From Orbicella franksi (taxonomy: Eukaryota), in the NCBI GenBank assembly GCA_964199315.1, contig OZ116709.1, forward strand, positions 22,940,001-23,004,000: a stretch of 64,000 nt of DNA, given 5' to 3'. The notes under the pieces are model-generated. The model was not told the origin of the DNA, ran no database searches, and saw only the letters and a program-made list of their open reading frames with translations. Shown piece after piece: positions 20,345 to 39,300 of the stretch (the stretch's first letter is position 1; each line of letters opens with the position of its first letter). The translations under genes and the position numbers were made by a program.

Positions 20345-21264
20345 GAAGTATCAAGACCTTCTACGGAGGTCCTTGTTTAACCGTAAGTTCTTACAGTATT
20401 GATGAGATAGCAGGTGTACTAAGCTGCAACCTGACTCTCACTTCTCAAAGTCAAGGAAGACAAGAGCCTTTCGCCATTAGCAGGTTATTAATTTCCACAC
20501 AATCAAGTTAAAAGGGGTCTTTTCAGTCTTTTCAGTCTCGTGTAAAAGTTTGTCCCTCCCTCTTTTTGTCACACTGTCGAGCTTTGAGCAGTTGCCAAGG
20601 GAACGCGGCCAATTAACACATGCTGCTTCGCTCGCATTGGCTACATATATTATGCTTGGAGAGCGGATTTGTTTGCATGATCCAAGGCAAAGAAGATGTA
20701 AGCAAACGCGTGGAAACCTTTGTCCTGACATGCTGTGTTTATAAGTTTGGTCGACCGCAATTTAAAAAGAAGTATCAAGACCTTCTACGGAGGTCATTGT
20801 TTAACCGTAAGTTCTTACAGTATTGATGAGATAGCAGGTGTACTAAGCTGCAACCTGACATGAAATCCTTTTTCCTGTCTATATGCAGCTAGTACTGACA
20901 TCTTCTGCCAGGTGTCACTTGACTCACCTCTCACTTCTCAGAGTCAAGGAAGACAAGAGCCTTTCGCCATTAGCAGGTTATTAATTTCCACACAATCAAG
21001 TTAAAAGGGGTCTTTTCAGTCTTTTCAGTCTCGTGTAAAAGTTTGTCCCTCCCTCTTTTTGTCACACTGTCGAGCTTTGAGCAGTTGCCAAGGGAACGCG
21101 GCCAATTAACACATGCTGCTTCGCTCGCATTGGCTGCATATATTATGCTTGGAAAGCGGATTTGTTTGCATGATCCAAGGCAAAGAAGATGTAAGCAAAC
21201 GCGTGGAAACCTTTGTCCTGACATGCTGTGTTTATAAGTTTGGTCGACCGCAATTTAAAAAAAA
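20345..21264 (+). repeat. Near-identical tandem duplication (424 bp + 496 bp)
   Basis: Copy 1 20345-20768 and copy 2 20769-21264; only a few substitutions plus a 69-bp indel and an A-run length difference; ends 2 nt before the TIR-gene ATG. Confidence 0.95.
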
Positions 21265-21266
21265 GA

Positions 21267-24200
21267 ATGGACGAGGAGAAGACAGCCGGAGAATCGCCAG
21301 ACGTCGGCGATGAGGCCCTCGAAGCTGATGAGGTTAAAAGTAGTGCTAATGTTGACAATACGATTGTTCCAATATCCCATGACCCTACTACGAAAGACCA
21401 TACGCATTTGACAGAGAATAGAGACGGTGTAGATTGCGTTGAAGAAAACAACAACGATTCAGACGGCCAAGATGGCAGAAATGGAGGGAATGGGGATCAA
21501 ACAGACGACGATGCGCAACTCGAACGACTTCAAATCCCGAAATCGACATCAGATGGCAAAGAGTATAGTGGAGAAAGTAACTCCGATAACACGAGTACTT
21601 CGAATGAGGGATCCCAACCTACGTCCCCGACAAAGTCGGTCAGTCCGCGGAAAGCAAAGAAAAGGGCTATATTTGTATCGTATGCGCCAGAGGCGAGTTT
21701 TATTGAGAAGCGTTTCATCTCATACACCATCAAAGAGTTGAAAAACATCGGATTTTGCGACGATATTTGGTTCGATAAAGACGACGGATTACCCACAGAA
21801 AGTCCATTCTGTTTCCAGCAGAGATTGGAGATTGCTGAAAAGTGCCGCGCATCTATTATGTTTTTATCTGAGGCCTACTTCAACTCCAGAGTTTGTCACC
21901 ACGAGGGAAGAATTTTACTCGATCGGGACGAAGAACGCGCTATTGATCATGACAACGACGACGAAGTTGAAAAGCCTGTAAAATTGTTCTGTATGAAATA
22001 TAACCGCGGCAAGCTTCCTCAAGACTACAAGCAGCTGGAGGAGCGAGTTCTCGACCTGAGTCATCATGTTGCTTCTAGCGTCGCTGAACTTTCCTCGTTG
22101 GTCGTGGGCTCTTTTAGCGAAACTCTGGAGCGATATGCCCCCCTTTTCGGGCTACGCATTCCGTCTCCTCCAAGCGAACCAGACATTTTAAAACTAGACA
22201 GACAAAAGCCAGTGTCTTCGTGGAATATAACCGATGTGCAGGCTTGGCTGGCTTCGCTGAAAATGCAAGCACACTGCGCGCTCAGCTTCGAGGAGAACGA
22301 AATCGACGGCTACTTGTTGGTTTCCATGAATGAAACGGACATGGAAACCTATTTAAATGTTGACAGTCGAGTGGCGCGGCGGAAACTTGTACAGCAAGTT
22401 AGGAAAATTCAAGAAGATCAAGTACAATTCAAGGAAAACTGGTTTTTGAAGTGTAAAAAAGGCAAAGTCAAAGAAGATTCTGTCTACGTTATCTGTGATC
22501 CAAATGATGTCCGGTTTTATCATAACCTGCGAGCGGATTTAGTACAGAAGAACCTCCAGGTAAAAATATCAAATTTGAATTCTCAATTAGCGATTTAGCA
22601 GTCACGCTATTGTGTTATTTATTGACTAATTAACGTGTCAATGGATTTGTGTTGGAATAATTTAGGGTACAAATATAGTTTCCACTGCTCATTAGGGAGA
22701 TTGTTTTATTGTTTTCTATGAATTGAAAACAATTTGTACGTACTTTCCAATATCGCGTAAACCCGCATTAATATCACTCCTACGCACAACAAAGGTGCGA
22801 ATTTAAAATTAAGCCCATTTTTAAGACACAAACATAGAGAAATAGGCTGCTTTACTAGTATTTTAATTAAAAGTCTTCACTGTCTCAAGAACTTAAGCCT
22901 GTTTATCGAGACGATTTGACAGCCCTCCTCTATTGTGCGTTTGTTCGAAGACGCGCGTGATGTCACGCTCCACGCTCGTAAACTTAACGAGCGGACAGCC
23001 CTCGCACACAGTTCAAGGTTGGAAAGAGGGTCTGTGAAGCAGCAACTTTGATTATGTTCGAATTTTCGTAAGTAAAGTGTGATTGAGCATTGCCGAAATG
23101 CCTGTATAAGAGGTTTATTAATATTTCTTGCTGGAGGATCAACGGTAAAAAGGAACCGAACAAAGAACACAGGAAAACGGAAGAGAGTAAAATCGTTCGA
23201 GCAAGGAGAAGCGTAAAATGTACCTAACAAACAAACCTGTTATTGGATCATGCAATAGCTACGTTAGAACAAAATTTAGGAATTTATGTTTACATTTTAG
23301 CAATTTATAGGGTCGCGGAAATGGTAAAACTTGCCACTTTGTTAACGCCTCATGAAATTAACACAACGAAAAGTGACGCGATCTTTTAAAAACACGCGTT
23401 AATATCATGGAACGTTAATCTATGAAGAGGTATTTTAAAATGATAAAGAACCTCTCAGCTCTTCATTGGTAAGGCCAGTGAAATTTATGTGCAGAAAGTA
23501 ATAAAAAATTAAGGAAAAACTGGAAAACTGTGGTTTAATTTAAAAACAAAACAAAACAAAACAAAACAAAACAAAAAAACAAAAAACGAGAAATCCAGGT
23601 TTCTGCTGTGGCCGAGTTCACTGTGTTGCCGTATTTGGGCAAAACACTTTATCCTTACAGTGACCCTCTCCACCCCAGAGTATTGGTTGCTGACAAATTG
23701 TCGAAGCAACAGAATACAAATACTGGGAGGAGGTTAAAATGTTATGGAGTTAGCTCCCAACCAGGCAGAGAAGCAATATCCTATGTAAAGTTCTGATTTC
23801 TTTGTTCTAAAAGAAACTTTTTGTCGCGAAAAGCGACTGTACTACGCGAATGGGCATTTAAACATCTAAAACTGTGAAATGCAAACTGGCTTTTTCGTAT
23901 TTTTTCGCACAGGTGTTCAAGCACGAGCGACTCGGCCAATCTAGAGAAGAGTTCTTGCAGCTCAATTCTGCGCATCTGGCCGCGTGTAGTCACGTGATCA
24001 TCCTCCTCTCCACCGCTGCGGCCACGTCACTTTTTGTCTACAATGAAGTTCTTTTCGCTGATTGGTTAGGCAAACCTTTCGTGGTTGCCATGGCTGCAAA
24101 CTCGTGGGATAAACTTCGACCCAACATGCAAGCCATTCTAGGGAGCTGCCCCGCGGTGAATTTTGAGGGTAACTCCTATGAAGAGAGTATGGATATACTG

Positions 24201-25350
24201 TTGTACCACTTGAAACCTTTCCGGAACATGCCTGCCGTCATCCTGGAGCAGGAGTTCTTGGACAGGATGGTCGAAGGCCTGAAACCTTTAAGAGTTCTTG
24301 CAACGCTTTCTGGTAGGTGTTAAAATTTAACATAGGAAAATAACAACATTTTATATATTAGGCTCTCTTGCTCTCTCAGCGCTAACCTCAATCCCAGGCT
24401 CTCCTCAACGACAAGGGAGGCAAAGGAGAGAGCCTGGGATCAAGGTTGGAACTTCCCAGGACTTTACGTTATGCCTGCCTCTTGTAATGCAGGTCAGCCG
24501 TTGTGGTTTATCATGATTTTGTTCGACATCAATTTGGAAACGAAATTGCTGCAAATTTTCCAAAATATTAGCTTGACACACTTCATGTTACCTGGCAACG
24601 GGTACCTGGCAACGGGTACCTGGCAACGGGTACCTGGCAACGGGTACCTAGCAACGGGTACCTAGCAACCCAACTGAGCTGAAATTTTTGATTGTCACAC
24701 AATGTCTTTTTTTACTTTAAGTTATATACTGTCTTGCTCGCTGGCTGGAAACGTATTTCCTGATGATGGCAATGTCTTTCCTTATAGATAAAAGCAGTGT
24801 AGATTTGGAGGAAATTTCTCCGCGACCAAACCTCTTCCTGAGTTATCACTGGGACGTACAGAACAAGGTGCAAGTGCTTGTTCAGTACTTGGAGAGTCAC
24901 GGCTACCAGTGTTGGACAGACGTGAGTAACGCAAACAAGCGTCACGCAACAAGTCATTCTCCCAATCACGAGAACACGCCTAATCAGATTCAGCGGAACA
25001 TCAAAGCGGCTACAGCTGTTGTATGTTGCGTGACACCCAAGTACATTTGCTCTGAGAACTGCACAAAGGATCTTAGCCTTGCTGCCTCGATGAACAAACC
25101 GGTCATTCCCGTAATGCTTCAGTGGCTGGCATGGCCACCCGAGGGTGGTCGGGTACGTAGGATTTTGGCGCCGTTACAGTGTATTGACATGAGTAATGAG
25201 AGCCTGTTCAGAAGGAACTTGAGCACCGTCGAGAACCACTTGAAGAAATTCGCGGGAAAACAAAGTCCACGTGATGGGCACTTGGTAGAACACGTACGAA
25301 TTGCCAAGAATCCCAGGCTTGTTCAACAAAAATCTCAACAGAAAGTATAA
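21267..25350 (+). CDS. Multi-TIR/SAM protein (acidic disordered N-terminus - TIR - SAM - TIR-like - TIR), 751 aa
   Basis: Exons 21267-22559, 23913-24312 and 24788-25350 (phases 0, 1; total 2256 nt). TIR1 IFVSY...IWFDK...IMFLSEAYFNSRVCHHE; SAM VSSWNITDVQAWLASL...FEENEIDGYLL...ARRKLVQQVRKI; TIR2 VYVICDPND...VIILLSTAAATSLFVYNEVLFADWLGKPFV; TIR3 LFLSYHW...CWTDV...VVCCVTPKYICSENCTKDLSLAASMNKPVIPV. Domains recognised by eye. Confidence 0.85.
24589..24670 (+). repeat. 14-bp minisatellite (TACCTGGCAACGGG) x ~6
   Basis: Four TACCTGGCAACGGG units followed by TACCTAGCAAC variants, in intron 2 of the TIR gene. Confidence 0.95.
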
Positions 25351-27093
25351 AGCATCAGGTATCTCGGCAAACAGCGTGTGAATTTCTCGCCACTTTGGCC
25401 TTATCTTGAAACTAATTTGTGGCAGCAACATTTCCGGACTCCTTTAGCACAGAAGAAAAAAATCCTAACGAAGCTTCAAACCTCTGGCGGCCATTCAAGA
25501 ATCTTTTAACAAAACTAGTCACAAATATACGGCATAGTGGCGAATCCATACTAGAAATGTGTGCGGCTTGTGTTATACGTGTTATATAAGTTGTCGTCAT
25601 ATTTCCCCCGCACTCAGTTGTACGGGGCGTTCTGTATCCTCAGTCAAGGACCTTTGTGCTTCACTGAAAGGACCAAGGGAGGGTCATCTTCCGTTCTCCC
25701 ATACCGATTCCCCCCTGTACACCCCTCCCCCGTCCTTGGGTCGTCATCAGTCTCCTCTTCTCCCACGCACCCATGGATTCGACACGGTAGATGTGTCTTC
25801 TCGATCTCACATCTTCCCAGTGTTTAGAGCTGTTTATATCCGAACTTTCATGGGCATTTCATTATTTCACTTGGCATGGCAAGGAAGAAGTTATCATGAA
25901 CAGGAAAATTGCAACAGAGAGGCAAATACCGATCGAAAATAGTTAAAGCTAAAGAAAGTATTTAAATTATTGACGATTACTGAGAACTGAGGTAATTTTA
26001 ATAAAAATCGGATGGAATGAGGAAAAATTATTTTACACAGCAATATGTTTCTTAATTTAATTCTGTAATATAGCGAAATATGTTTATAAGTGAGGGAAAT
26101 TGAAACTGGAAGTCTTATTTTAGTACCTCAGGTTTTCTTTTCGACTAGCGTCTCGCGTAGGCTGCAAATCATACTTCCTAAACCTATCTTATCGATCGAC
26201 AAACTCAGAATTCATGTTCAGCGAACGGTGAATCTCGGCTCAGGAAAACCTTTATCGAAATAAACGTTTAGGCCGGGCACGATTGCTAGGCGTGCCTGAT
26301 TTTCTTAACTACAAGAACTCAATATGTCTTTTATGGAGTAGCTTCCTCGTAGTTTGGAAATCGAAATCTTTTTCAACTCTCACCAAAAAGGAAGTATTCA
26401 GCATTTCCCGGGTCAGGATAAACTAAGCGGATGCTAAAAAACGGTTTGGAAGGTTCCCCTTGCCGGTTTTGTTGACACTGGCGCACGCATTGGTCAGTTT
26501 TAAAGTTGTTTCAGGACAAAAACAGCAAAAGCTGGTCATGACAAGCTCTCAACCTTCATCCCTCAATTTTCCGAAAATTTCTCCGCGGGTTTTCAAACAT
26601 TCTAGCCTATTCATCAATCCTCCCACTTGCCTTTCGTCTTAGAAGAGTACGCACTCTTAGTCAGGGTCTTAGGACTCGGCCGTGTTAGGAACGGTGAAAA
26701 ACTACAGGAATCCGTATTGTTGGAGTCCATTTTGAAGAGCCACACTTTTGCAATACATGCTGTTAAATCGATACAAGTAAATTTTAAATCTGCGTGTGTT
26801 TTTTTGTCAGTCAAAACAGCCTGCAGCTCCCACTAGTCTTAACAGTGTTCCTCGCGCGCGCGCACAGGATCAGAACGATTCCGTCACTAACACCAATTAC
26901 AAATTAGGCCTACGACATAATTTCCGTAAATCGTCTACGACATAATTAGCTGATAAACTTTGTCGAAATTTTTTGCGGCGACTGACACAAAATGGGTTAA
27001 AAAAAGTTGTCAATTGGAGTCATCGCCGTTTTCTAACGGCAAAACGCAGCATTCATTGCCACGAATCAAAGCAGGGTCTAAATTTTGTACATC

Positions 27094-30000
27094 ATGCTGG
27101 CAGGTGTAAGGTATCAAGTGGACAGCGGATGGGCCTGGGTTGTGTGTTTTGCTTCTTTCTTTGTTCAGTGTGTTGTATTTGGCACTATACAGTCGTTTGG
27201 GACGCTTTTTATTTCATTGCTCAATGATTTTAAATCTGGAGAATCTGCGACAGGTAAGCTTTGAGTTTTATTACAGATCACTTTAGGCGTGATTGATATT
27301 ATGATTTATCACCGAAAAGATTTGAAGGAGTTTCTGTTCTTGACTCGAAGTTGTCCATTATTAATTTGAATTTTCGTAATTTACTACTTTTCTTTTCCTC
27401 CTATCGTATAAGTACTTTTCACGAACCAACTTTCATATTAGAATCATGTGAACCTTTTGATGGCGAACGGTAACGTACATGGCGAACGTAAGGGTTCGTG
27501 GAAAAGAACGCCGTCTTATGTCCTCAAAAGCATTAACACTTGTCTTCGGTATCGTCTGTGTTAAACGAGTATTATCCAATTTTTTTTATCTGTATACAGC
27601 ATGGGTTGGCTCGTTGGGTTATGGGTTTCTCTTCGTCATTGGACCCGTCACAACAGCCTTGTGCGAACACTTTGGATGCCGTGTTATGGCATGCGCGGGC
27701 AGCGTACTGACCACCGTCTCTTTGCTTGTGACGTCGTTCGCGCCCAGTATCGCCAGCATGTACTTCACGTTCGGAGTGCTTTGGGGGACTGGAGGAAGTT
27801 TCTTGTTCTTCTCCGGTCTGCTCATCTTGAGGTTTTACTTCAACAGAAACATTTCTCTCGCTAACGGTATCACTATGACTGGGGCCGGATTTGGAACGCT
27901 TGTCTTCAATGTCATGCTGCAGGAATTCGACGAGAAGTACGGTTGGCGCGGAGGAATGCGCGTTTTAAGCGTATTTTCCGCGTTGACGTTCTTGTGTGGC
28001 TGCGCGTACATTCCACCACCAGTTGATTACTTAGCCTTCGAAAGACCGAGCGTCTGGTTTCGGCTGAAGAGGCTCATAGATCCACGCCCGTGGAGAGAGC
28101 GAGCGTTTACGATGTGGGTGTTGTCAATGTCGTTCATTCTCTTCGCGTACTTCTTTCCTTATACATATCTGGTGAGCAAAATTCCGGCTAGTTCAATTAA
28201 TGTGGTCAAACGTCTATCACGTGACTTCATGAAAACTATAAGATATTGTCATACCTGTACAGAGAAAACAATTTAAAATCGAAATGGGTTGCAACGTGCT
28301 ACAACTACTAAATCGTCATCTCGGTCGTTTGCTAATTAACTAATGATGTGTGCGACAGAATTTATAACAAAAACAACGGAGACGGAACACTCGAGAAGAT
28401 ATTTTTCATATTTAGTATTCACGTATAATCAGATGTTTCAGAAGCAAAACTACTCTAAGATTAATAATCACATTAACAGGATCGCACTACAAGAAGAAGT
28501 TATACTTAAGGATTTAAATCATATCTCCAAAAAAAGTGGTAAATGGTTTCTAGCCACTTGGGTTTTGGGTTACAAAACTGGGTTACAAAAATAATCTAGG
28601 AGTGCTAGTCGTGGAACCAGATTTACGAAAGCCTTTTAAATTAAGATGTCTCGAATACGAAAGACTTGTTAAAAAAAATGCTTAGGATGCATCTTAACTT
28701 AAGAGAGCTTCGTTAATTAAGCTCCAACTGATCTCTGCTGATAATACCAATTGTATTGATACTAATAACTGAGTGTTATCTGTAAATCTATTGTAGGTCC
28801 GCATGGCTGTAACACTGGGTATCCCCGTCTCCCAAGGGGCTCTTTTGCTTGGGTACCTTTCAGTGTCAGCCATATTTGGTAAACTCCTGTGTGGAAGATT
28901 GGCGGATCTCCCACGCGTCAGGCGTTTGTACATTTTCGTTCTCTCAGCAGTCATTTTAAGCCTGTCTTCTATGTGTGTCACCGCTGCCAAAAGTTATCAC
29001 GGCCTGCTGGCTTACACATTAGTAGCTGGATTTTTTGACGGTTGTTTCGTGGTGACAGTTCCACTTATCACGCAGGATATTGTTGGCAAAGATCTCATGG
29101 CTAAGGCAATCGGGAACTTGTACGGAGTGGTGGCCTTTCCTTTGACTTTGGGACCTCCTGTCTTAGGTAAAGCTTATTTCTTTACTTTTTTTTTGCTTTA
29201 TTACAGAAGTAGGAACAAAATTAAAACCTGGTCCCTTAACCATATCAACAAAGCCAATGTAACCAAAAAGGGCATTCAAAAATTAGAAAAAAAAATTACC
29301 TTTAATCATCAAATTTACATTTTTAGCGTTTATGGATCGTTGTCAAGGGAATAACCCTAGGAGACTTATATGTCCGCGACTTGATTGCCCTTTCCTTCAG
29401 GGTTTCCATTTTCTAGTCAGTTAGTCGTAATTAAGTTTAGTTATTCTGTTTTGTTCTGTCCAAAGGTGAACTATACAAAACCACCAATTCCTTCACCACC
29501 GCTTTCTTTGTCTCCTCTTGTTTTATTCTCGTCGGTGTGAGCATTATCTACATCGTTCAAAGGATTCGTCCAGACCTGGTTAGCAAGCGAGAGCCCACCA
29601 GACAGGAAGTGTATGATTCTTCTCTGGTGCCTACTCCCAGCATACATTCTGCAAGCGTGGTGGATACATTGAGTGGTATGTTTGTCACAGAGCCGGGACT
29701 GTCTGCTACTCGCTTAGATCCAATGGAAATAGGTTCGTACCAACGATTCGATACTTTTCGCCGAGAGGAACCAAGAGCAACTTTTCTAGAGCCTGTCCAT
29801 GGGCGAATGGCAAATCCAACAGAGATAGAGGCAGTGTACAGACAAGCTGTTGACAATTTATCAAACATTAGTGGCGTTACAGGTCATCACCGCAATGCAT
29901 CGGACACCAGTGGCAATTCTAAAGTTAACGTTCCTACTCAATCTCGCTCAGCAAGTATGTTCAGTGGTTCAATGGCGTCATTTCCCGAAATGCCGACAGT

Positions 30001-33000
30001 TAATGTCGATTCTTCTTCGGGTTTACAAATTCCTTCCGGAGAAACCATGGATTTACCAAAGGCAAGCGAATCATGTACCACCCTGGTGGATCCAAATATT
30101 GGAGCGTCGCCTCACGGCGTAGATGAGGGTGGGATTAACATATCTGGTGATGGCATGATCCTGCAGGGAGGCGAGCAGCAGGAAAAAGTGTCTGTGACGA
30201 GCGATCAGTATCCAACCGCCAGTAGCCCAACTCTTGACATACAGACTGCTATGGAAGCAAAGGAAATCGAGCACGCTGATACAGAATTTTCTGATTTATT
30301 CACAAAGCCTCAACCGTCACAAGTGGCAGAAGAAAATAAGACTTCACCAGGGCCAATGATTGTTGACAACAGGGATATAGAACTCGAGATACAATTAGTT
30401 AAACTTCTCCCTCCTCCAGAAATTCATCGCAAAAGGAGAGCCGATCCTCTAGATACTGTATCAAATGACCAAAGTGACATTGCCAGTATCTCAAGCACAG
30501 ATGGCCTTGGAGATGATGTCACACTGAAAACAGAGAAAAAAGACCCTGATGCAGGAACGATTCAAGATAGCGAACAAAGCGTGAGGACTCCTATAATTGA
30601 GACAATATCGCTGGAGAACGAGGGAAGTGTAGAAAATGAATCTGTAAATGGTCTGCTCGAACTTGTTCGTATTCCACCCCCACCCAGCGTTCCACGCACA
30701 GGGCAGTTAGTGGCTTTGGAAAGTGAAGCAAATAAGGATGGGGAAAATTCTTTCCTTTCCGAGGTAAAATCGGACGCCGAGCAGGATAACCAGTATGACA
30801 AAGAAGCAGCCGCCGATGATAATTCTTCTTGCAGAGCCGTTTCAACCACTCAACGGAAAGAAAGATTACATCTTGCTATTATTGACCAACTTAATCTGTT
30901 GAGTGAAAGACTTGAAGCTGTTGCCGCTCGCCAGATTCAGGAAGAAGAGGAACACAGGGATAATGACCAACCAGATCAACGTCCCCCATTCTCACCAGCA
31001 CTCCAGAGTTTACCTTTAACGCCTCTTTATTCTGCAAATCACAGTGTACCACTTACACCCGCTTGTGCATGGTCAAGTTGTCTCAACACCCCAGCACCTA
31101 CTCCACACCAAACGCCTCCAAGTGCGTTTCTGACAACAGCACCGACTCCCATCCACATTCCGCACACACCAGCCCCAGGTGTGTCTGGAATCTGCACTCC
31201 AAGCGACGTGTCTATGGCGAACCTTTCACGCTCAAATGTTTATGAGACAGGACAGGTGAATACTAACGATTCTAATAAATGGAACGATGTAATGGACGGT
31301 TGCAGCCCTTCGCCCTCACAGGAAACTGACAACCAACAACGGAGCAGATGTTCCTCTTTCTCAGAGGTAGGACAAGAATTTGTTGTCAACGAATGGAGTG
31401 TAAGAGATCTGCGTGGATCCACAGAGGCATTCTCTCCAAAACAGTCAAGCGGAGCCAGTTCTTCAGTTTCGAATAGCGCCAGATCAATAGGTGACTTAAA
31501 CAGCGTGAGTGAACCAATTGATATTGTGGAATTCACGATTAATGAAAGCCACGGAGGACATATGAACTCTCCAGAAAATTATAGTCCCAGTCAGCAGGCG
31601 GAGGCCTCAGTTGATATGTGTCTACCGCAAAAGCCATGTTTAAATTATGAAAACACAGACGTTTACAGGCAAAATCCGCTTCAACAGTCACACCTGAATT
31701 CCAATTTAACAGAAGTAAAAACGAACCAAATGAACGACTCATGCAAAGTGGAAACTTTAAATATTACCCAACAGTTGGCTGAAGAAGTGCCTCAAGAAGA
31801 GCTTTCCAATAGTGAAATGCCTCTGGAAGTGCATACTTGCCAGCAATTGTTTAACACGACAGATTCAAAGGAAAACGAACTAGAGATGGTAGGTCTAACC
31901 GTGCAAAAACCAGACACAATTAGCAATAACTATCAACCCGAATCTGCAAGTATTCTCTTACCAGAGGTTATTTCTAACGCTTCTACTACTTCCGAGCCCC
32001 AACAAAAGATAGAATACAGACCAGATTCAAGAGACATCCAGCGAGAAACCAGGTTTGGTCCAAGCCCACTGGGCTCAGAATTAAACTCATTTTTGGTATC
32101 AGACCAAAAAGAGCTTACGGGATTTTCCCAGTGCAACCCATTTCAACAGCCATCGAAAAGATTGCCAGATGAATCGCAAAATCCATTCGAAATTCCTGGT
32201 GGATTAGATTCACATGATGAACATCCTCAGTCGTATCAGTCAAAGGGATTAACCACAGAGAAAGAACAGTGCATAACCGAACAAACGGAAGCGTTCTTAT
32301 CGGAGAGTAGGTCTTTCACCCAGGTCTCGCCAAACGTGAATTCATCACCTCAAGCAAGTGACTCGCATTTTGAGCCCTATTGTGCTGAAAATTTGATTGA
32401 CCAACAAGTTGTTCTTCAGCGAAATAATTTCACGGATAAGAACTTTCATAGACTCCCAGAAGAGTCTGACACTGGTATTACGGAACAGACATTCACCACT
32501 TCTGACAATCCCAAGCTGGAAACAGATCAAGAAGTCAGTACACGAAGCCAATGGACAATTTTTTCGCAAAGCGAGGAGGGTTTAATTTTTGAGATGGATA
32601 CAGAAAGTGAATCATCTTCGGATAGTAGTGCAAAACTTGAAAGCAACTCTGCATGTGCGTCAAGGGAACCAAAGACTGACGAGAAGGATCATTGTGCTGC
32701 AGATCAGGAGAGTCTGTTCCCTCCACTACAGATCTTTTCTGACGTGGCCGACATGATCACTAAGATGAATGGTCAGGGTATTCCTGTCACACTTCCTCCT
32801 CCGCCCAAACAAGTCCATCGTAAGCGAGCAGACCCGTCCGTTTCTGTCACCGCAGAAATATCTCTCCCTTATGAGACTGGTGGTAAGGACAGTGAATCAA
32901 GACAGAAATCTGTGGTAGACAAACAGACTGTCGAGAAAATAGTTCTAGAGCCTGTTTCCATGATAGATCACGAACACCTTGGAACCCTGAAACTAAAGCA

Positions 33001-33463
33001 AAGTGGGAGTACTGAAACACATCATGTGCCCAGTGATGAAGATTTGTCAGCGACTGGCAATTCTCTCAGCGAGATTGAATCAGATTTGATATCTGAATCT
33101 AAGCTTGACGAGCTTCCAGATAAACTGAGGGACAATTCAATATGTGGAATTGTCTGTCAAGAATTGGAATCAATTAATGATGAGGACGAGATGTTCGCAA
33201 GCGAAAAAGCCGATGACTCAAATATAGATGGAGAAATGGTAAAGACTTCGATCCACGATGATATTGCGCCACTTTTGGCACAAAACAGTGAGCCCATCCA
33301 ATACGTAAATCTTGGAGATCTTCCCGAGAATTGCCTTGTTCTCCACAAACGCCCCTCGTCTGCCTCATCAACAGATGATTCTAGCACTTCCACAGATTCT
33401 AGCCTGTCAGAAAACGAAATGCCTTACAGTAAATTGCACGAGGATACACCAGCCGAAGGATAA
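27094..33463 (+). CDS. SLC16A10-like: Monocarboxylate/aromatic amino acid transporter (SLC16, MCT8/MCT10-like) with ~1300-aa C-terminal tail, 1699 aa
   Basis: Exons 27094-27253, 27600-28171, 28797-29166 and 29466-33463 (phases 1, 0, 1; 5100 nt). SLC16 TM1 signature DSGWAWVV, AWVGSL, GCRVMAC, GKLLCGRLAD, PLTLGPPV. The last exon continues in frame into the 1308-codon ORF. Confidence 0.88.
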
Positions 33464-36332: not shown

Positions 36333-39300
36333 TCATAAAATTGTTTCTTGACAAAGTTCCAAGTTGTAGTCAAGTTCTGCCTGAGATAAAAGTGTTGTTA
36401 TTTGTATTTTTCCATCAGTAGTTATGTCTTTTCCACTGCTTGTGTTATCAATAATTGAAGCTGGACGACTAGTCACATCGTGTTCCAATGAATTTTCAAA
36501 CATTACGCTAAACATGTCCATAGAACTAGCGTACCATCCTCCCTTTACAAGCTTCTCTTGTTGAACAACTACTTCAAGATCGTCAAAGCTCAAAGCCGGT
36601 GTTACTATGGTTACAGAACCAAGCTTGTTTTCCTCTGACGTATCCACGATTTCGCTAGACTGCGAAGAAGGGCTCTGTCTATTGGAATCGCTTTCATAAC
36701 CCGATGATTCATTCAACGAATCAGTGCAGTGCAACTGGGCAGCGGCTGACCATGCGCGAAACATTGCCGACTTCATTAAAGTTGACGTACCACTTCGGTT
36801 TAGCATTTCCATGGAAACGCTACGCTGTAACACGTGGTCGCAGTGCGCAGCCCGCGCAAAGAAAGCAGCTTCGGTGGGAAAGCTGTAAATCGTTCGTGAA
36901 GCTCTCTCGTAATTCGTTGATTTTTTCGTCAATTTATCAGTCTCGTTCAGAAGCATAACCTTTTCTTGACATAGTTCTGTTTTTGTCGGCATCAGCCACG
37001 GCACTAGAAACAGAAGACATACCCCACATGTCATGACAGCTCCAGAAAGGTAAAATGCTATGTCGTATTTTCCGAACACATCGAAGATGAAGCCTGTGGA
37101 AAATGAAATTGAAATCTGTGATCATTACTTCATTCCTTATAACAATACAACAACGCATTGTCAATGTGAAATCTGACTCTCAAACAAAGCAAATCATCGA
37201 CTACCGCAAACATTAAAAGACGCCAGTGGGGCGGAAAGAGGAGAGACCGAGGGAACGAGGTTAAGATATCCGCTAGCCTTCTTATGACTTGTCTCGCGCT
37301 CTTCCCCAACGAAAGGTTGCGTGACGAGCCCAAAGAAGGGAAAATATTCGCTTGATCAGATTTTTCTGAGCTTCCATGATGATTGACGTTGCGTGAAAAA
37401 CCTTCCGAGAGATTTAACTATTTGCGTATCAAAACTACACGTCGATAGAGAAGTCTGCAACCAAAAGTTTCCACTTTTTATTAGGATGTCACTAAACAGA
37501 AACACTTTCTATAAACAACCTACTCAGACTACTCATATAAAATCTAACAGCGCGAGACGCGAGTCCACGGATAGAGATGGTTCTGATCTCCTGGTAAGAA
37601 GCTCCTGACATCATTCAAATTATACCAACCTGCCACAGGTGGCCCCAGGACATTTCCAATGGCCGCTGCGAAACAAAGATTTCCAAAGGCACGCCCTACG
37701 AGCTTCTCCCCGACAATGTAAAGAGTTCCCATCCCAAACATGACAGCTAAGCATCCATCGAAAAGTCCAAACACAACAACATACACAACTAAAGACAAAT
37801 AACTCCGAGCTAGAGGAAACAGTGTCGCGTTGACAGCCAAAACAAGACCAATGATTTGAACAGATGCAACTCTGTCTATTCGTGGACTATTTCCAAGCCT
37901 TCCGAACGCTATTCGGGCAGCTGTTTGCGTGAAGGCCTGGTAACCAATGAGTAAAGCACTTTTGGAGCTGGGTATACCAATGTCGTTTGCTATGCTTATC
38001 TGTTGAAACATAAGAGATACTCTTTAGTTCCCACAAATTAAAACCAGGGAGGGAAATTTTATTTTAGAATACTCTCTCCTCTTGCAGCGAAGATAATCAC
38101 TAGTGGTATTAGACTAAATGATAACACGTTATTTTTAACAAGAGGTAACATGGAATAAATTTACCAAATTATTTGAATTGTAGCTGATGTAACCAGTCCA
38201 ACTGATCCAACTCTAGTCTTTGCCCCGAGGGATTATTTTCGGCTTCTCGCTTCATAAAAAGCAACATTGCAACAACGTTGCACGCTTCTCAAACTCACCA
38301 TATACTGTAAACAAAGCAAGTCATGACCGTGACGGTGTCTGGAAATCTGATCTTAATTAACATAGATTTTTACGATTATATTTCTCCGTTCTCTCCTCAG
38401 ATTTAGTTTCGATTGAGAAGATATATCAAACACTCAAGACAATGTTTGACCACATTGCCACACACCTCGAAGTTTGTCAAAAATACTCCGATGCGCGACG
38501 TATTTTCAACTCTCTTCGCAGTGTTTGGAAAACAAACTGAACATACTTACCAAAAAGACGAAAGGTATAAAATTGCCAAACGCGATGAAACTCAAGGAAA
38601 TGGCCCACACCGCAAAGGCCTTATTTTTCCAAGGATTTAAACTGAGAAATTCCAACAAACGTAATTTAATCTTGTAAAGAATGCCAATATCTAAACTTCT
38701 ACGTCTGTCCTTCTTTTGCAGCTGAACACGTTGTTCCTGCTTATCCTCAAGTCTGCTGTAGCTCAAACTCGAAACACACATTAACAATGACATTCCAGCG
38801 AGAATTCGCATCGTTATCCTCCAATCATAATGAGCAATAAGTTGATTGATGGCCCACGTCATCGGCGGAACACCCAATCCAGCTCCAGCGATGGCAATTC
38901 CGTAAGCCAATGATAAATAGTTTCTGAAATGCGACGGTAAAATTACTAGAGAGGCGAAGTAACAGAAACTCGTCCCAGCTCCCCAGAGGAGCCCATAGGT
39001 AATGTACAACAGAGTAAAATTGGTGACGAATGACGTAGTTAGAAGACCCACAAATGACAGAATGCCTCCAAGGCACGTGACTACCCGGCATCCTAATTGC
39101 TCGCAGAGGACCGTGGTTAAGGGGCCCATGAAAAACATAACACCGAACGCCAGCGAGCCCACCCATGCTAGAAATAATAACAATAATAAATCATAATTAA
39201 ATAAAGCTGCCCGTGATTGCATCTCAAAAAGAACAAAAATCCTTCCCGGCTTCATTATTTATGGCTTTGACAGGAACTTATTAGAGTGACAGCCCGCCTT

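What the first reader, a model, noticed from the sequence alone, without database searches (positions are those of the whole stretch)
21267..25350. TIR-SAM-TIR-TIR protein: candidate self-oligomerising TIR enzyme/adaptor of cnidarian innate immunity
Seen: a 751-aa, three-exon gene with no signal peptide or TM segment, a ~130-aa acidic disordered N-terminus, three TIR-like units of the TIR_2/SARM/bacterial style (FxSY...W.D...S..C..E) and one central SAM domain. Known: in SARM1, SAM oligomerisation juxtaposes TIRs to activate NAD+ cleavage, and bacterial and plant TIRs make cyclic ADPR-type signals. Inference: SAM polymerisation here could array several distinct TIRs in one chain without ARM, LRR or receptor modules. 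I do not recognise this architecture from any characterised animal protein, so it may define a new TIR signalling or cell-death module.
Basis: partly seen in the sequence, partly recalled or inferred. Interest (0 to 1): 0.8.

Follow-up and report, generated by a model that had tools for sequence, protein, structure and literature searches.

The report
Conserved coral TIR-SAM-TIR-TIR gene
This is a real, expressed coral gene for a cytosolic protein with three different TIR domains around one SARM1-like SAM domain; it belongs to an old, single-copy animal family that databases already list but nobody has studied, so it is a good candidate for NAD+-cleavage tests rather than a new kind of system.

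Summary
Exons 21267-22559, 23913-24312 and 24788-25350 (+) splice at GT-AG sites confirmed by RNA-seq. They give a 751-aa protein that is 745/751 identical to RefSeq XP_020623595.1, an "uncharacterized protein" of Orbicella faveolata.

The architecture is: acidic disordered N-terminus (aa 1-130), TIR1, SAM, TIR2, TIR3. There is no signal peptide and no TM segment. TIR3 passes Pfam and TIR1 is borderline. TIR2 is invisible to Pfam, yet it folds confidently as a TIR and is the most conserved domain. The SAM's best solved relative is SARM1 SAM1.

The family is not cnidarian-specific. Collinear relatives occur in Montipora, Nematostella (A8DUR5, noted in a 2016 survey as a TIR+SAM "novel gene"), bivalves, gastropods, an annelid and sea urchins. 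Partial models occur in lungfish and paddlefish. The gene is single-copy in this genome.

The three TIRs are not equivalent. TIR1 has both NADase hallmarks (Ser138, Glu213). TIR2 has Glu476 but Cys/Tyr in place of the Ser. TIR3 has an invariant Asp659 in place of the Glu.

The most likely function is a SARM1-like self-assembling TIR enzyme or scaffold. Catalysis, oligomerisation and an immune role are all untested. This is a new variant of a known kind, of moderate interest.

The parts
21158..21266 (+). 5' UTR (approximate transcript start)
   Evidence: RNA contig X1 record 1 begins at 21158; depth rises in bin 21074-21260
21267..22559 (+). Exon 1 CDS, aa 1-431 (disordered N-terminus, TIR1, SAM, betaA/alphaA of TIR2)
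   Evidence: ORF, ATG at 21267, donor CAG|gtaaaa; junction seen in RNA
21267..21656 (+). Acidic intrinsically disordered N-terminus, aa 1-130
   Evidence: pI 4.1, 31 D/E versus 11 K/R; pLDDT 35-46; 9-20% identity across phyla
21657..22151 (+). TIR1, aa 131-295; Ser138 (21678-21680) and Glu213 (21903-21905); invariant WFDKD BB-loop motif
   Evidence: Pfam TIR_2 25.3 bits; family profile hits MyD88 TIR at E 4e-4; pLDDT >90 with beta-alpha order of a TIR; Glu in 110/111 homologues; Ser invariant
22212..22424 (+). SAM domain, aa 316-386
   Evidence: Pfam SAM_2 1.3e-10; best PDB hits are SARM1 SAM1, E 4.1e-8
22476..22559 (+). TIR2 first part, aa 404-431 (betaA VYVICDP with Cys410 at the Ser position, alphaA)
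22560..23912 (+). Intron 1 (1353 nt), splits TIR2
   Evidence: GT..AG, skipped in RNA contigs and in 18 raw reads
23913..24312 (+). Exon 2, aa 432-565 (rest of TIR2 plus its C-terminal helical extension); Glu476 at 24045-24047
   Evidence: TIR fold of the orthologous segment at pLDDT 85 with Foldseek top hits RPS4, SPARTA and SARM1 TIRs; VIA Z 14.1/13.5 for aa 398-534
24313..24787 (+). Intron 2 (475 nt, phase 1); holds a dispersed short repeat (~24406-24448) and a 14-bp tandem repeat (24589-24669)
24788..25350 (+). Exon 3 CDS, aa 565-751 plus stop TAA 25348-25350
24817..25260 (+). TIR3, aa 575-722; Ser583 (24841-24843); Asp659 (25069-25071) at the catalytic-Glu position; long disordered Ser/Thr-rich BB loop
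   Evidence: Pfam TIR_2 5.4e-17; VIA Z 16.8 to SPARTA TIR and Z 15.6 to SARM1 TIR; Asp in every orthologue, Glu in the nearest paralogous family; BB loop
25351..26239 (+). 3' UTR (at least to here)
   Evidence: RNA contigs X1 record 7 and X2 record 12 run on to 26239-26300

Best explanation
The locus is the single-copy Orbicella orthologue of an ancient metazoan family of cytosolic TIR-SAM-TIR-TIR proteins (the A8DUR5_NEMVE / LOC110061107 family).

Shown here: the gene is spliced and expressed as predicted. It encodes a disordered acidic N-terminus followed by four confidently folded domains. The SAM is most like SARM1 SAM1. All three TIR units have TIR folds but are very divergent from one another. 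Each has kept its own pattern of active-site residues across more than one phylum: TIR1 has Ser+Glu, TIR2 has Cys/Tyr+Glu, and TIR3 has Ser+Asp.

Inferred: the protein works like a SARM1-type assembly. SAM-SAM and TIR-TIR contacts bring TIR domains together, and NAD+ is then cleaved to ADPR or cADPR-type products at the canonical site of TIR1, possibly also at TIR2. TIR3 and/or TIR2 serve as non-canonical partner or regulatory TIRs, much as a non-catalytic TIR partners a catalytic one in paired plant NLRs. The long Ser/Thr-rich BB loop of TIR3 and the acidic N-terminal tail are candidate regulatory elements. An immune role is plausible by analogy only.
For: - Gene model and expression.
- Domains.
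- Full-length AF2 model: pLDDT 79.9 and pTM 0.66 despite about 21% disorder, with all four domains mostly above 90.
- SAM is closest to SARM1 SAM1, E 4e-8, ahead of Shank and Polyhomeotic SAMs. SARM1 is the top reviewed-protein structural match.
- alphaC carboxylate sits six residues into alphaC in all three TIRs. Glu is present in 110/111 TIR1 sequences and 55/64 TIR2-profile matches that cover the column; among TIR2 units of the family proper the only non-Glu residues are two Gln.
- The betaA Ser equivalent to SARM1 Ser567 is present in TIR1 and TIR3. Its role is described in bioRxiv 10.1101/2025.04.09.647920.
- Many non-TLR animal TIRs with this Glu make cADPR when expressed in E. coli (bioRxiv 10.64898/2026.04.20.719644).
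- Strong purifying selection is implied by 36-47% full-length identity between coral and anemone, bivalve or urchin proteins, with TIR2 at 52-56%.
- Single copy in the genome.
Against: - No biochemical datum exists for any member of the family.
- A Glu at this position is necessary but not sufficient: TLR2, IL-1R9 and IL-1R10 have it and are inactive.
- The most conserved domain (TIR2) lacks the Ser, and the best Pfam TIR (TIR3) lacks the Glu.
- There is only one SAM, whereas SARM1 needs a SAM1-SAM2 tandem for its octamer.
- The SAM-SAM complex prediction gave no verdict.
- TIR1's nearest solved sequence relative is the non-catalytic adaptor MyD88.
- Neighbouring genes are unrelated transporters, so context adds nothing.
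- No expression link to immunity was examined.
Confidence: 0.45

Rival explanations
1. Non-enzymatic adaptor or scaffold. The three TIRs act only as protein-protein interaction modules that bridge TLR or IL-1R-like receptors, MyD88 or other TIR proteins. The SAM provides multimerisation, as in a signalosome hub, and no NAD+ chemistry is involved.
For: The TIR1 profile's best solved relatives are MyD88 TIRs, including a DKD motif aligned to MyD88 box 2 (DRD). TIR3 has Asp rather than Glu. TIR2 lacks the Ser. Having three different TIR surfaces in one chain suits a bridging role. Several Glu-bearing animal TIRs are inactive.
Against: Glu213 and Glu476 are invariant in the ten full-length proteins aligned across cnidarians, bivalves and echinoderms. 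MyD88 itself has Gln at that position. A pure adaptor has no obvious reason to keep the carboxylate in all three domains. There is no death domain or other downstream module.
Confidence: 0.3
2. TIR2 is the functional core. It is either the catalytic centre with an unusual pocket or a ligand- or nucleotide-sensing TIR, while TIR1 and TIR3 are accessory.
For: TIR2 is the most conserved domain across phyla: 52-56% against 37-55% for TIR1 and 39-47% for TIR3. It has many invariant residues beyond the fold core, including D411, P412, D414, F445, S470 and E476. Its compact structural matches are to the catalytic SARM1 TIR, with TM by target up to 0.73.
Against: It lacks the betaA Ser that lies 2.6 A from the catalytic Glu in SARM1; however S-to-A only reduces activity in RBA1. 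Lungfish and paddlefish members have Gln at the Glu position. Pfam TIR models barely see it.
Confidence: 0.15
3. The protein's role is not innate immunity. It has a conserved housekeeping, neuronal, developmental or stress and NAD+-homeostasis function, as SARM1 does in axon degeneration. This rival concerns the biological role and is compatible with either mechanism above.
For: The gene is a single-copy, slowly evolving, one-to-one orthologue across phyla. Expanded, fast-evolving coral TIR immune families look different. It is not clustered with immune genes. It is transcribed in ordinary poly(A) coral RNA-seq libraries, whose conditions I did not check.
Against: TIR domains are overwhelmingly immune or cell-death modules. 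The nearest paralogous TIRs sit in ARM-Death-TIR-TIR proteins that have been proposed as immune adaptors. No tissue or challenge data were examined either way.
Confidence: 0.35
4. Artefact: a chance ORF chain, pseudogene or mis-joined gene model.
For: None beyond the fact that exon 2 alone has no Pfam hit.
Against: Exact splice junctions are seen in RNA. The model is identical in length to the RefSeq model. It aligns collinearly along its full length across phyla. The AF2 model is confident.
Confidence: 0.01

Closest known systems
SARM1 / TIR-1 / dSarm (ARM-SAM-SAM-TIR NAD+ hydrolase)
   Same: A cytosolic SAM+TIR protein. The SAM is the closest solved relative of SARM1 SAM1 (E 4e-8). TIR2 and TIR3 superpose on the SARM1 TIR (Z 13.5 and 15.6). 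SARM1 is the top reviewed-protein structural hit. TIR1 has both the Ser567-like and Glu642-like residues.
   Different: There is no ARM autoinhibitory domain; a disordered acidic tail and an extra TIR sit N-terminal instead. There is one SAM rather than a tandem. There are three TIRs rather than one, and the C-terminal TIR has Asp rather than Glu. It is not an orthologue of SARM1.
ARM-Death-TIR-TIR proteins of invertebrates ('ecTIR-DC family 6' as cited in PMC6836662)
   Same: These are the nearest sequence relatives of TIR3 outside the family (E about 1e-46 to 1e-38). They also carry tandem TIRs in a cytosolic multidomain protein and are also uncharacterised.
   Different: They have an ARM-like N-terminus and a Death domain in place of TIR1 and SAM. 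Both of their TIRs keep Glu at the catalytic position. They are 1200-1500 aa long.
MyD88 TIR adaptor
   Same: The TIR1 family profile hits MyD88 TIR domains best among solved structures (E 4e-4). Its DKD BB-loop motif aligns with box 2 of MyD88.
   Different: There is no death domain. TIR1 has Glu where MyD88 has Gln.
Paired plant TIR-NLRs RRS1/RPS4 (catalytic plus non-catalytic TIR heteromer)
   Same: The concept of unequal TIRs working together: heteromeric TIR assemblies are described in PMC13732033 (abstract listed). That the RRS1 TIR lacks the catalytic Glu while RPS4 has it is from my own knowledge. RPS4 TIR is the top Foldseek hit of TIR2.
   Different: Here the unequal TIRs are fused in one chain with a SAM. 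There is no NB-ARC or LRR. The comparison is an analogy only.
Prokaryotic SPARTA TIR-APAZ TIR domain
   Same: It is the best structural match of TIR3 (Z 16.8, rmsd 2.3 A over 130 residues). It is an oligomerisation-activated NADase.
   Different: Only the fold is shared, at 17-21% identity. There is no Argonaute partner, and TIR3 lacks the Glu.

Membership tests
TIR domain superfamily (each of the three units) | Flavodoxin-like betaA-alphaA...betaE-alphaE fold that superposes on solved TIR domains | tested here: met
   TIR2: model pLDDT 85, and almost all Foldseek PDB hits with E<=1e-3 are TIRs; VIA Z 14.1. TIR3: VIA Z 15-16.8 to SPARTA, Hydra TRR-2 and SARM1 TIRs. TIR1: not searched alone for lack of a structure job; pLDDT >90 with the correct element order plus sequence hits to MyD88 and RUN1 TIRs.
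TIR domain superfamily (each of the three units) | Pfam TIR/TIR_2 score above the gathering threshold | tested here: inconclusive
   TIR3 is met (62.9 bits against 28). TIR1 scores 25.3 bits in the window protein, is met in the Potamilus orthologue at 28.7 bits, and PF01582 scores 25.7 against 21.3 on the whole protein. TIR2 is not met: 13.9-20.4 bits in five orthologues, although the matches cover the full length of the profile.
Catalytic (NAD+-cleaving) TIR domains | Glutamate protruding from helix alphaC into the pocket | tested here: inconclusive
   TIR1 Glu213 is met (110/111 homologues). TIR2 Glu476 is met (55 of the 64 TIR2-profile matches that cover the column). TIR3 is not met: Asp659 is present in every orthologue.
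Catalytic (NAD+-cleaving) TIR domains | Conserved betaA serine next to the Glu (SARM1 Ser567, SNC1 Ser26) | tested here: inconclusive
   TIR1 Ser138 and TIR3 Ser583 are invariant. TIR2 has Cys/Tyr. The role of the residue is taken from bioRxiv 10.1101/2025.04.09.647920.
Catalytic (NAD+-cleaving) TIR domains | Measured NAD+ consumption or cADPR/ADPR production that depends on the Glu | not testable with these tools
   This needs recombinant protein and LC-MS.
SARM1 orthologues | N-terminal ARM autoinhibitory domain | tested here: not met
   aa 1-130 are disordered and are followed by TIR1. There is no ARM hit in Pfam.
SARM1 orthologues | Tandem SAM1-SAM2 that forms the octameric ring | tested here: not met
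   There is a single SAM, aa 316-386. It resembles SAM1. The self-association prediction gave no verdict.
SARM1 orthologues | Single C-terminal TIR with a catalytic Glu | tested here: not met
   Two TIRs follow the SAM, and the C-terminal one has Asp.
TIR-SAM-TIR-TIR orthogroup (A8DUR5_NEMVE / XP_020623595.1) | Full-length collinear alignment with the same four domains in the same order | tested here: met
   99.2% identity to the Orbicella faveolata RefSeq model. Full-length identity is 73%, 65%, 47% and 36% to another coral, Montipora, Nematostella and Potamilus, and 38% and 39% to Mya and Diadema. The domain content of the orthologues was confirmed.
MyD88-type adaptors | Death domain N-terminal to the TIR | tested here: not met
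   No Death domain hit.

The most novel reading that the evidence does not exclude
The chain is a pre-assembled heterotypic TIR machine. Three anciently diverged TIRs each retain a different subset of active-site residues: Ser+Glu, Glu only, and Ser+Asp. They pack against each other and, through SAM-driven oligomerisation, form composite NAD+-processing sites, with degenerate TIRs acting as built-in activators or regulators of the catalytic one. This would define a second animal SAM-TIR NADase pathway parallel to SARM1, retained from corals to lungfish and lost in tetrapods, insects and nematodes, possibly with a distinct nucleotide product.
Probability: 0.2. Interest if true: 0.75.

Novelty: new variant of a known kind. 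Interest (0 to 1): 0.5.

Why it matters
TIR domains are now known to be NAD+-processing enzymes in bacteria, plants and SARM1. A 2026 preprint reports that many non-TLR animal TIRs make cADPR.

This family is a clean, single-copy, deeply conserved test case. It has three unequal TIRs and a SARM1-like SAM in one 751-aa cytosolic protein, with natural "mutants" (Asp for Glu, Cys/Tyr for Ser) fixed for hundreds of millions of years.

Showing which TIR is active, and what the others do, would inform three questions: how catalytic and scaffolding TIR functions diverged in animals; whether SARM1-type SAM-driven activation predates the ARM regulator; and which TIR signalling corals use.

The apparent presence in lungfish and paddlefish also bears on the claim that vertebrate TIR proteins are limited to TLRs, IL-1Rs and five adaptors (PMC8662601).

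The existence and architecture of the gene are not new, however.

Tried and rejected
- Complex prediction with two copies of the SAM domain (window:22194-22442) scored 0.19 against a mark of 0.32. The tool's verdict was "no answer", so this counts neither for nor against SAM self-association.
- hhalign between the shallow alignments of TIR1, TIR2 and TIR3 gave only weak scores: TIR2 against TIR3 E 3.6e-4 at probability 37%, the other pairs E about 0.1.
- An hmmsearch of the TIR2 profile against PDB sequences found nothing. The TIR3 profile gave only E>=0.13 to SARM1 and TIR-1.
- Exon 2 alone has no Pfam hit.
- Gerdol et al. 2017 (Dev Comp Immunol), which defines the "ecTIR-DC" families, is not held. 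I therefore could not tell whether this family has an ecTIR-DC number. The three papers that use the term do not describe a SAM-containing family.
- Searches for the gene and protein accessions in papers found nothing.
- One of the two raw-read RNA runs (X21) laid no reads.
- A search of this genome for a second SARM1-like SAM found only weak hits, E>=0.005. The ORF holding one of them (the third-ranked hit, L009) is SAM-only. Whether a canonical SARM1 exists in this genome was not settled.
- Model coordinates cannot be read in scripts, so inter-domain contacts and side-chain orientation were not analysed.
- Pseudogene or artefact: rejected.
- TM or secreted protein: rejected.
Full report
**1. 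Observation**

The ORF scan and the sequence around the proposed boundaries show three coding blocks joined by canonical introns:
- Exon 1 is 21267-22559 (donor CAG|gtaaaa).
- Exon 2 is 23913-24312 (acceptor ttcgcacag|, donor CTG|gtaggt).
- Exon 3 is 24788-25350 (acceptor ccttatag|, stop TAA).

Together they give 2256 nt, or 751 codons plus a stop. Public RNA-seq laid on 20700-26300 shows exactly these two joints. Each is GT..AG and each is present in assembled contigs of two independent studies. In raw poly(A) reads, 18 reads support the first joint and 7 the second. The transcript starts near 21158, and the 3'UTR continues beyond 26239. Within the listed differences, substitutions occur in the CDS but the only indels lie in the 3'UTR.

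**2. Identity of the gene**

The spliced product is 745/751 identical, and equal in length, to RefSeq XP_020623595.1, "uncharacterized protein LOC110061107 [Orbicella faveolata]". The window is therefore from Orbicella or a very close relative, and the gene model already exists in public annotation. Searches of the window's own 497-Mb assembly with exon 1 found only this locus. Exon 3 found only distant TIR genes elsewhere. The gene is single-copy. Downstream neighbours are MFS/SLC16 transporter genes and there is no immune-gene cluster.

**3. Domains**

Pfam results on the window's own pieces:

| Unit | Residues | Result |
|---|---|---|
| SAM | aa 316-381 | SAM_2 E 1.3e-10 |
| TIR1 | aa 135-223 | TIR_2 25.3 bits, cut-off 28 |
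| TIR3 | exon 3 | TIR_2 E 5.4e-17 |
| Exon 2 alone | aa 432-564 | no hit |

Further evidence per domain:
- **TIR1.** On the full-length protein, PF01582 also passes its whole-protein cut-off, with its best stretch over TIR1. TIR1 passes TIR_2 in the Potamilus orthologue. A profile of TIR1 orthologues hits MyD88 TIR (E 4e-4) and RUN1 TIR among solved structures.
- **TIR2.** It spans the exon 1/2 junction. In five orthologues it gives only sub-threshold TIR_2 matches, though four of the five cover nearly the whole profile (E 8e-4 to 0.08). An AF2 model of the orthologous segment is confident (pLDDT 85, pTM 0.83). Its Foldseek hits in the PDB are almost exclusively TIR domains: RPS4, SPARTA TIR-APAZ and SARM1, with TM by target up to 0.73.
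- **Full-length model.** The model of the RefSeq protein has pLDDT 79.9 and pTM 0.66. All four domains are mostly above 90, and aa 1-130 and 726-751 are disordered.
- **VIA-align.** TIR3 (aa 575-722) reaches Z 16.8 to SPARTA TIR, 15.9 to Hydra TRR-2 and 15.6 to SARM1 TIR. TIR2 (aa 398-534) reaches Z 14.1 to RUN1 and 13.5 to SARM1.
- **SAM.** Its best solved relatives are SARM1 SAM1 (E 4.1e-8), ahead of Shank and Polyhomeotic SAMs. SARM1 is the top match among reviewed proteins.
- **N-terminus.** It is acidic (pI 4.1) and poorly conserved.
- **Membrane or secretion signals.** There is no hydrophobic leader. The only hydrophobic 19-mer is the buried betaC/alphaC stretch of TIR2.

The three TIR units are very unlike each other; hhalign between their small profiles is weak. 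They are anciently diverged, not recent tandem copies.

**4. Distribution**

Full-length, collinear relatives with the same domain order were found in:
- another coral (73% identity) and Montipora capricornis (65%);
- Nematostella vectensis (47%; UniProt A8DUR5 and A7SU33);
- the bivalves Potamilus, Sinanodonta and Mya (36-40%);
- the sea urchins Diadema antillarum and D. setosum;
- the gastropod Babylonia, with partial models in Nucella and Biomphalaria;
- the annelid Dimorphilus.

Strongly matching partial models come from chromosome-scale assemblies of the lungfish Protopterus annectens (E 5e-124) and the paddlefish Polyodon spathula (E 4e-94). The family is therefore at least eumetazoan in age, not cnidarian-specific.

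Domain by domain, TIR2 is the most conserved across phyla (52-56%). TIR1 is at 37-55%, SAM at 33-53% and TIR3 at 39-47%.

**5. Active-site residues**

Helix alphaC carries a carboxylate six residues from its start in all three TIRs. The residues at the two hallmark positions are:

| Unit | betaA serine position (SARM1 Ser567) | alphaC carboxylate position | Conservation of the carboxylate |
|---|---|---|---|
| TIR1 | Ser138, invariant | Glu213 | Glu in 110/111 homologues |
| TIR2 | Cys410 (Cys or Tyr in orthologues) | Glu476 | Glu in 55 of the 64 TIR2-profile matches covering the column; Gln in lungfish and paddlefish |
| TIR3 | Ser583, invariant | Asp659 | Asp in every orthologue from coral to urchin |

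Both TIRs of the nearest paralogous family (ARM-Death-TIR-TIR proteins) have Glu at the TIR3-equivalent position. A HMMER alignment to the C. elegans TIR-1 TIR puts Asp659 opposite the catalytic Glu. MyD88 has Gln opposite Glu213.

The betaA serine lies next to the Glu in SARM1 (Ser567) and contributes to activity (bioRxiv 10.1101/2025.04.09.647920).

Only TIR1 carries both hallmarks. TIR2 and TIR3 each lack one, and these differences have been fixed for a very long time. TIR3 also has a long, variable, Ser/Thr-rich disordered BB loop. TIR1 has an invariant WFDKD BB-loop motif.

**6. Mechanism**

What is shown is the anatomy described above. What is inferred is a SARM1-like logic. Assembly through the SAM and through TIR-TIR contacts would bring TIRs together. 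NAD+ would then be cleaved at TIR1, perhaps also at TIR2, with the degenerate TIRs acting as partners or regulators.

Points in favour:
- The SAM and TIR folds are related to those of SARM1.
- The Glu residues are strictly retained.
- A recent preprint reports that most non-TLR animal TIRs keep this Glu and that many make cADPR in a Glu-dependent way (10.64898/2026.04.20.719644).

Points against or open:
- Glu is not sufficient; TLR2, IL-1R9 and IL-1R10 are inactive despite having it.
- There is one SAM, not the SARM1 tandem.
- The in-silico SAM-SAM test gave no verdict.
- TIR1 looks most like MyD88.
- No member of the family has been assayed.

A pure adaptor role is the main rival. The single-copy, slowly evolving pattern also leaves open a non-immune role, as with SARM1 in neurons.

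**7. Comparison with what is known, and novelty**

It works most like SARM1, but it fails three defining features of SARM1: the ARM domain, the tandem SAM, and a single Glu-bearing C-terminal TIR. It is therefore not a SARM1 orthologue.

It is a member of an orthogroup that public databases list as "uncharacterized" or "TIR domain-containing". UniRef auto-names the Mya protein an ADP-ribosyl cyclase. The family was seen before: van der Burg et al. 2016 (PMC5094078) list TIR+SAM transcripts of sea anemones whose best TrEMBL hit is A8DUR5_NEMVE, among "additional novel genes" that were not followed up. I could not read Gerdol et al. 2017 to see whether it has an ecTIR-DC number. I found no functional study.

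- the cryptic but best-conserved TIR2;
- the fixed pattern of Ser+Glu in TIR1, Cys/Tyr+Glu in TIR2 and Ser+Asp in TIR3;
- the affinity of the SAM to SARM1 SAM1;
- the wide phyletic spread, including basal vertebrates.

**Verdict.** This is a new variant of a known kind (SAM-TIR proteins), of moderate interest (0.5). This scan holds no other note on this gene; the only matching entry is the same finding.

Noticed in passing
window 20345-21227: A near-perfect duplication lies immediately upstream of the gene and overlaps its transcript start. One 300-nt block occurs at 20435-20734 and again at 20928-21227 (99% identical, 493 nt apart). A 91-nt block occurs at 20345-20435 and at 20769-20859. The RNA 5' end at about 21158 lies inside the second copy, so the promoter region may be duplicated.
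   Followed up: partly
window 24406-24448 (intron 2): A short dispersed repeat attracts many RNA reads and contigs that continue into unrelated sequence. There are 'opposite strands' joints at 24409/24426 and depth up to 105. It is probably a small inverted-repeat element that is common in transcripts elsewhere in the genome.
   Followed up: no
window 24589-24669 (intron 2): A 14-bp tandem repeat (TACCTGGCAACGGG, 5.8 copies). RNA-library contigs skip 42 nt (three units) at 24608-24651, which suggests a length polymorphism between individuals.
   Followed up: no
window 27479-33463 (+) and 36333-39255 (-): MFS/SLC16-type transporter exons lie on both strands downstream. They include a 1308-aa ORF (29537-33463) with no Pfam hit, which is the subject of another first-stage note. 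In the AFDB cluster search, a 284-aa entry named 'Monocarboxylate transporter 4' (A0A6S7HRJ4) aligned at 36% identity to TIR2-TIR3 of this protein. That hints at a mis-named or fused model, and possibly at conserved adjacency of the two genes in another cnidarian.
   Followed up: partly
P0051 (688 aa, MetaClust UPI0007D32E7E): A family variant with an additional N-terminal TIR_2 domain (aa 55-188) ahead of the TIR1-SAM-TIR2 region, that is, a fourth TIR. Its source organism was not identified.
   Followed up: no
P0054 (Protopterus annectens), P0068 (Polyodon spathula): The vertebrate members have Gln instead of Glu at the TIR2 catalytic position. The AFDB cluster hits A0A401PFU5 and A0A401QDF9 (40% and 33% identity) may be further fish members, but their organism names were not shown.
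   Followed up: partly
P0052 (Biomphalaria glabrata A0A2C9JL59): This gene model joins TIR1-SAM-TIR2 to reverse-transcriptase and RNase H fragments. It is probably a retroelement insertion or a mis-joined model in the snail assembly.
   Followed up: no
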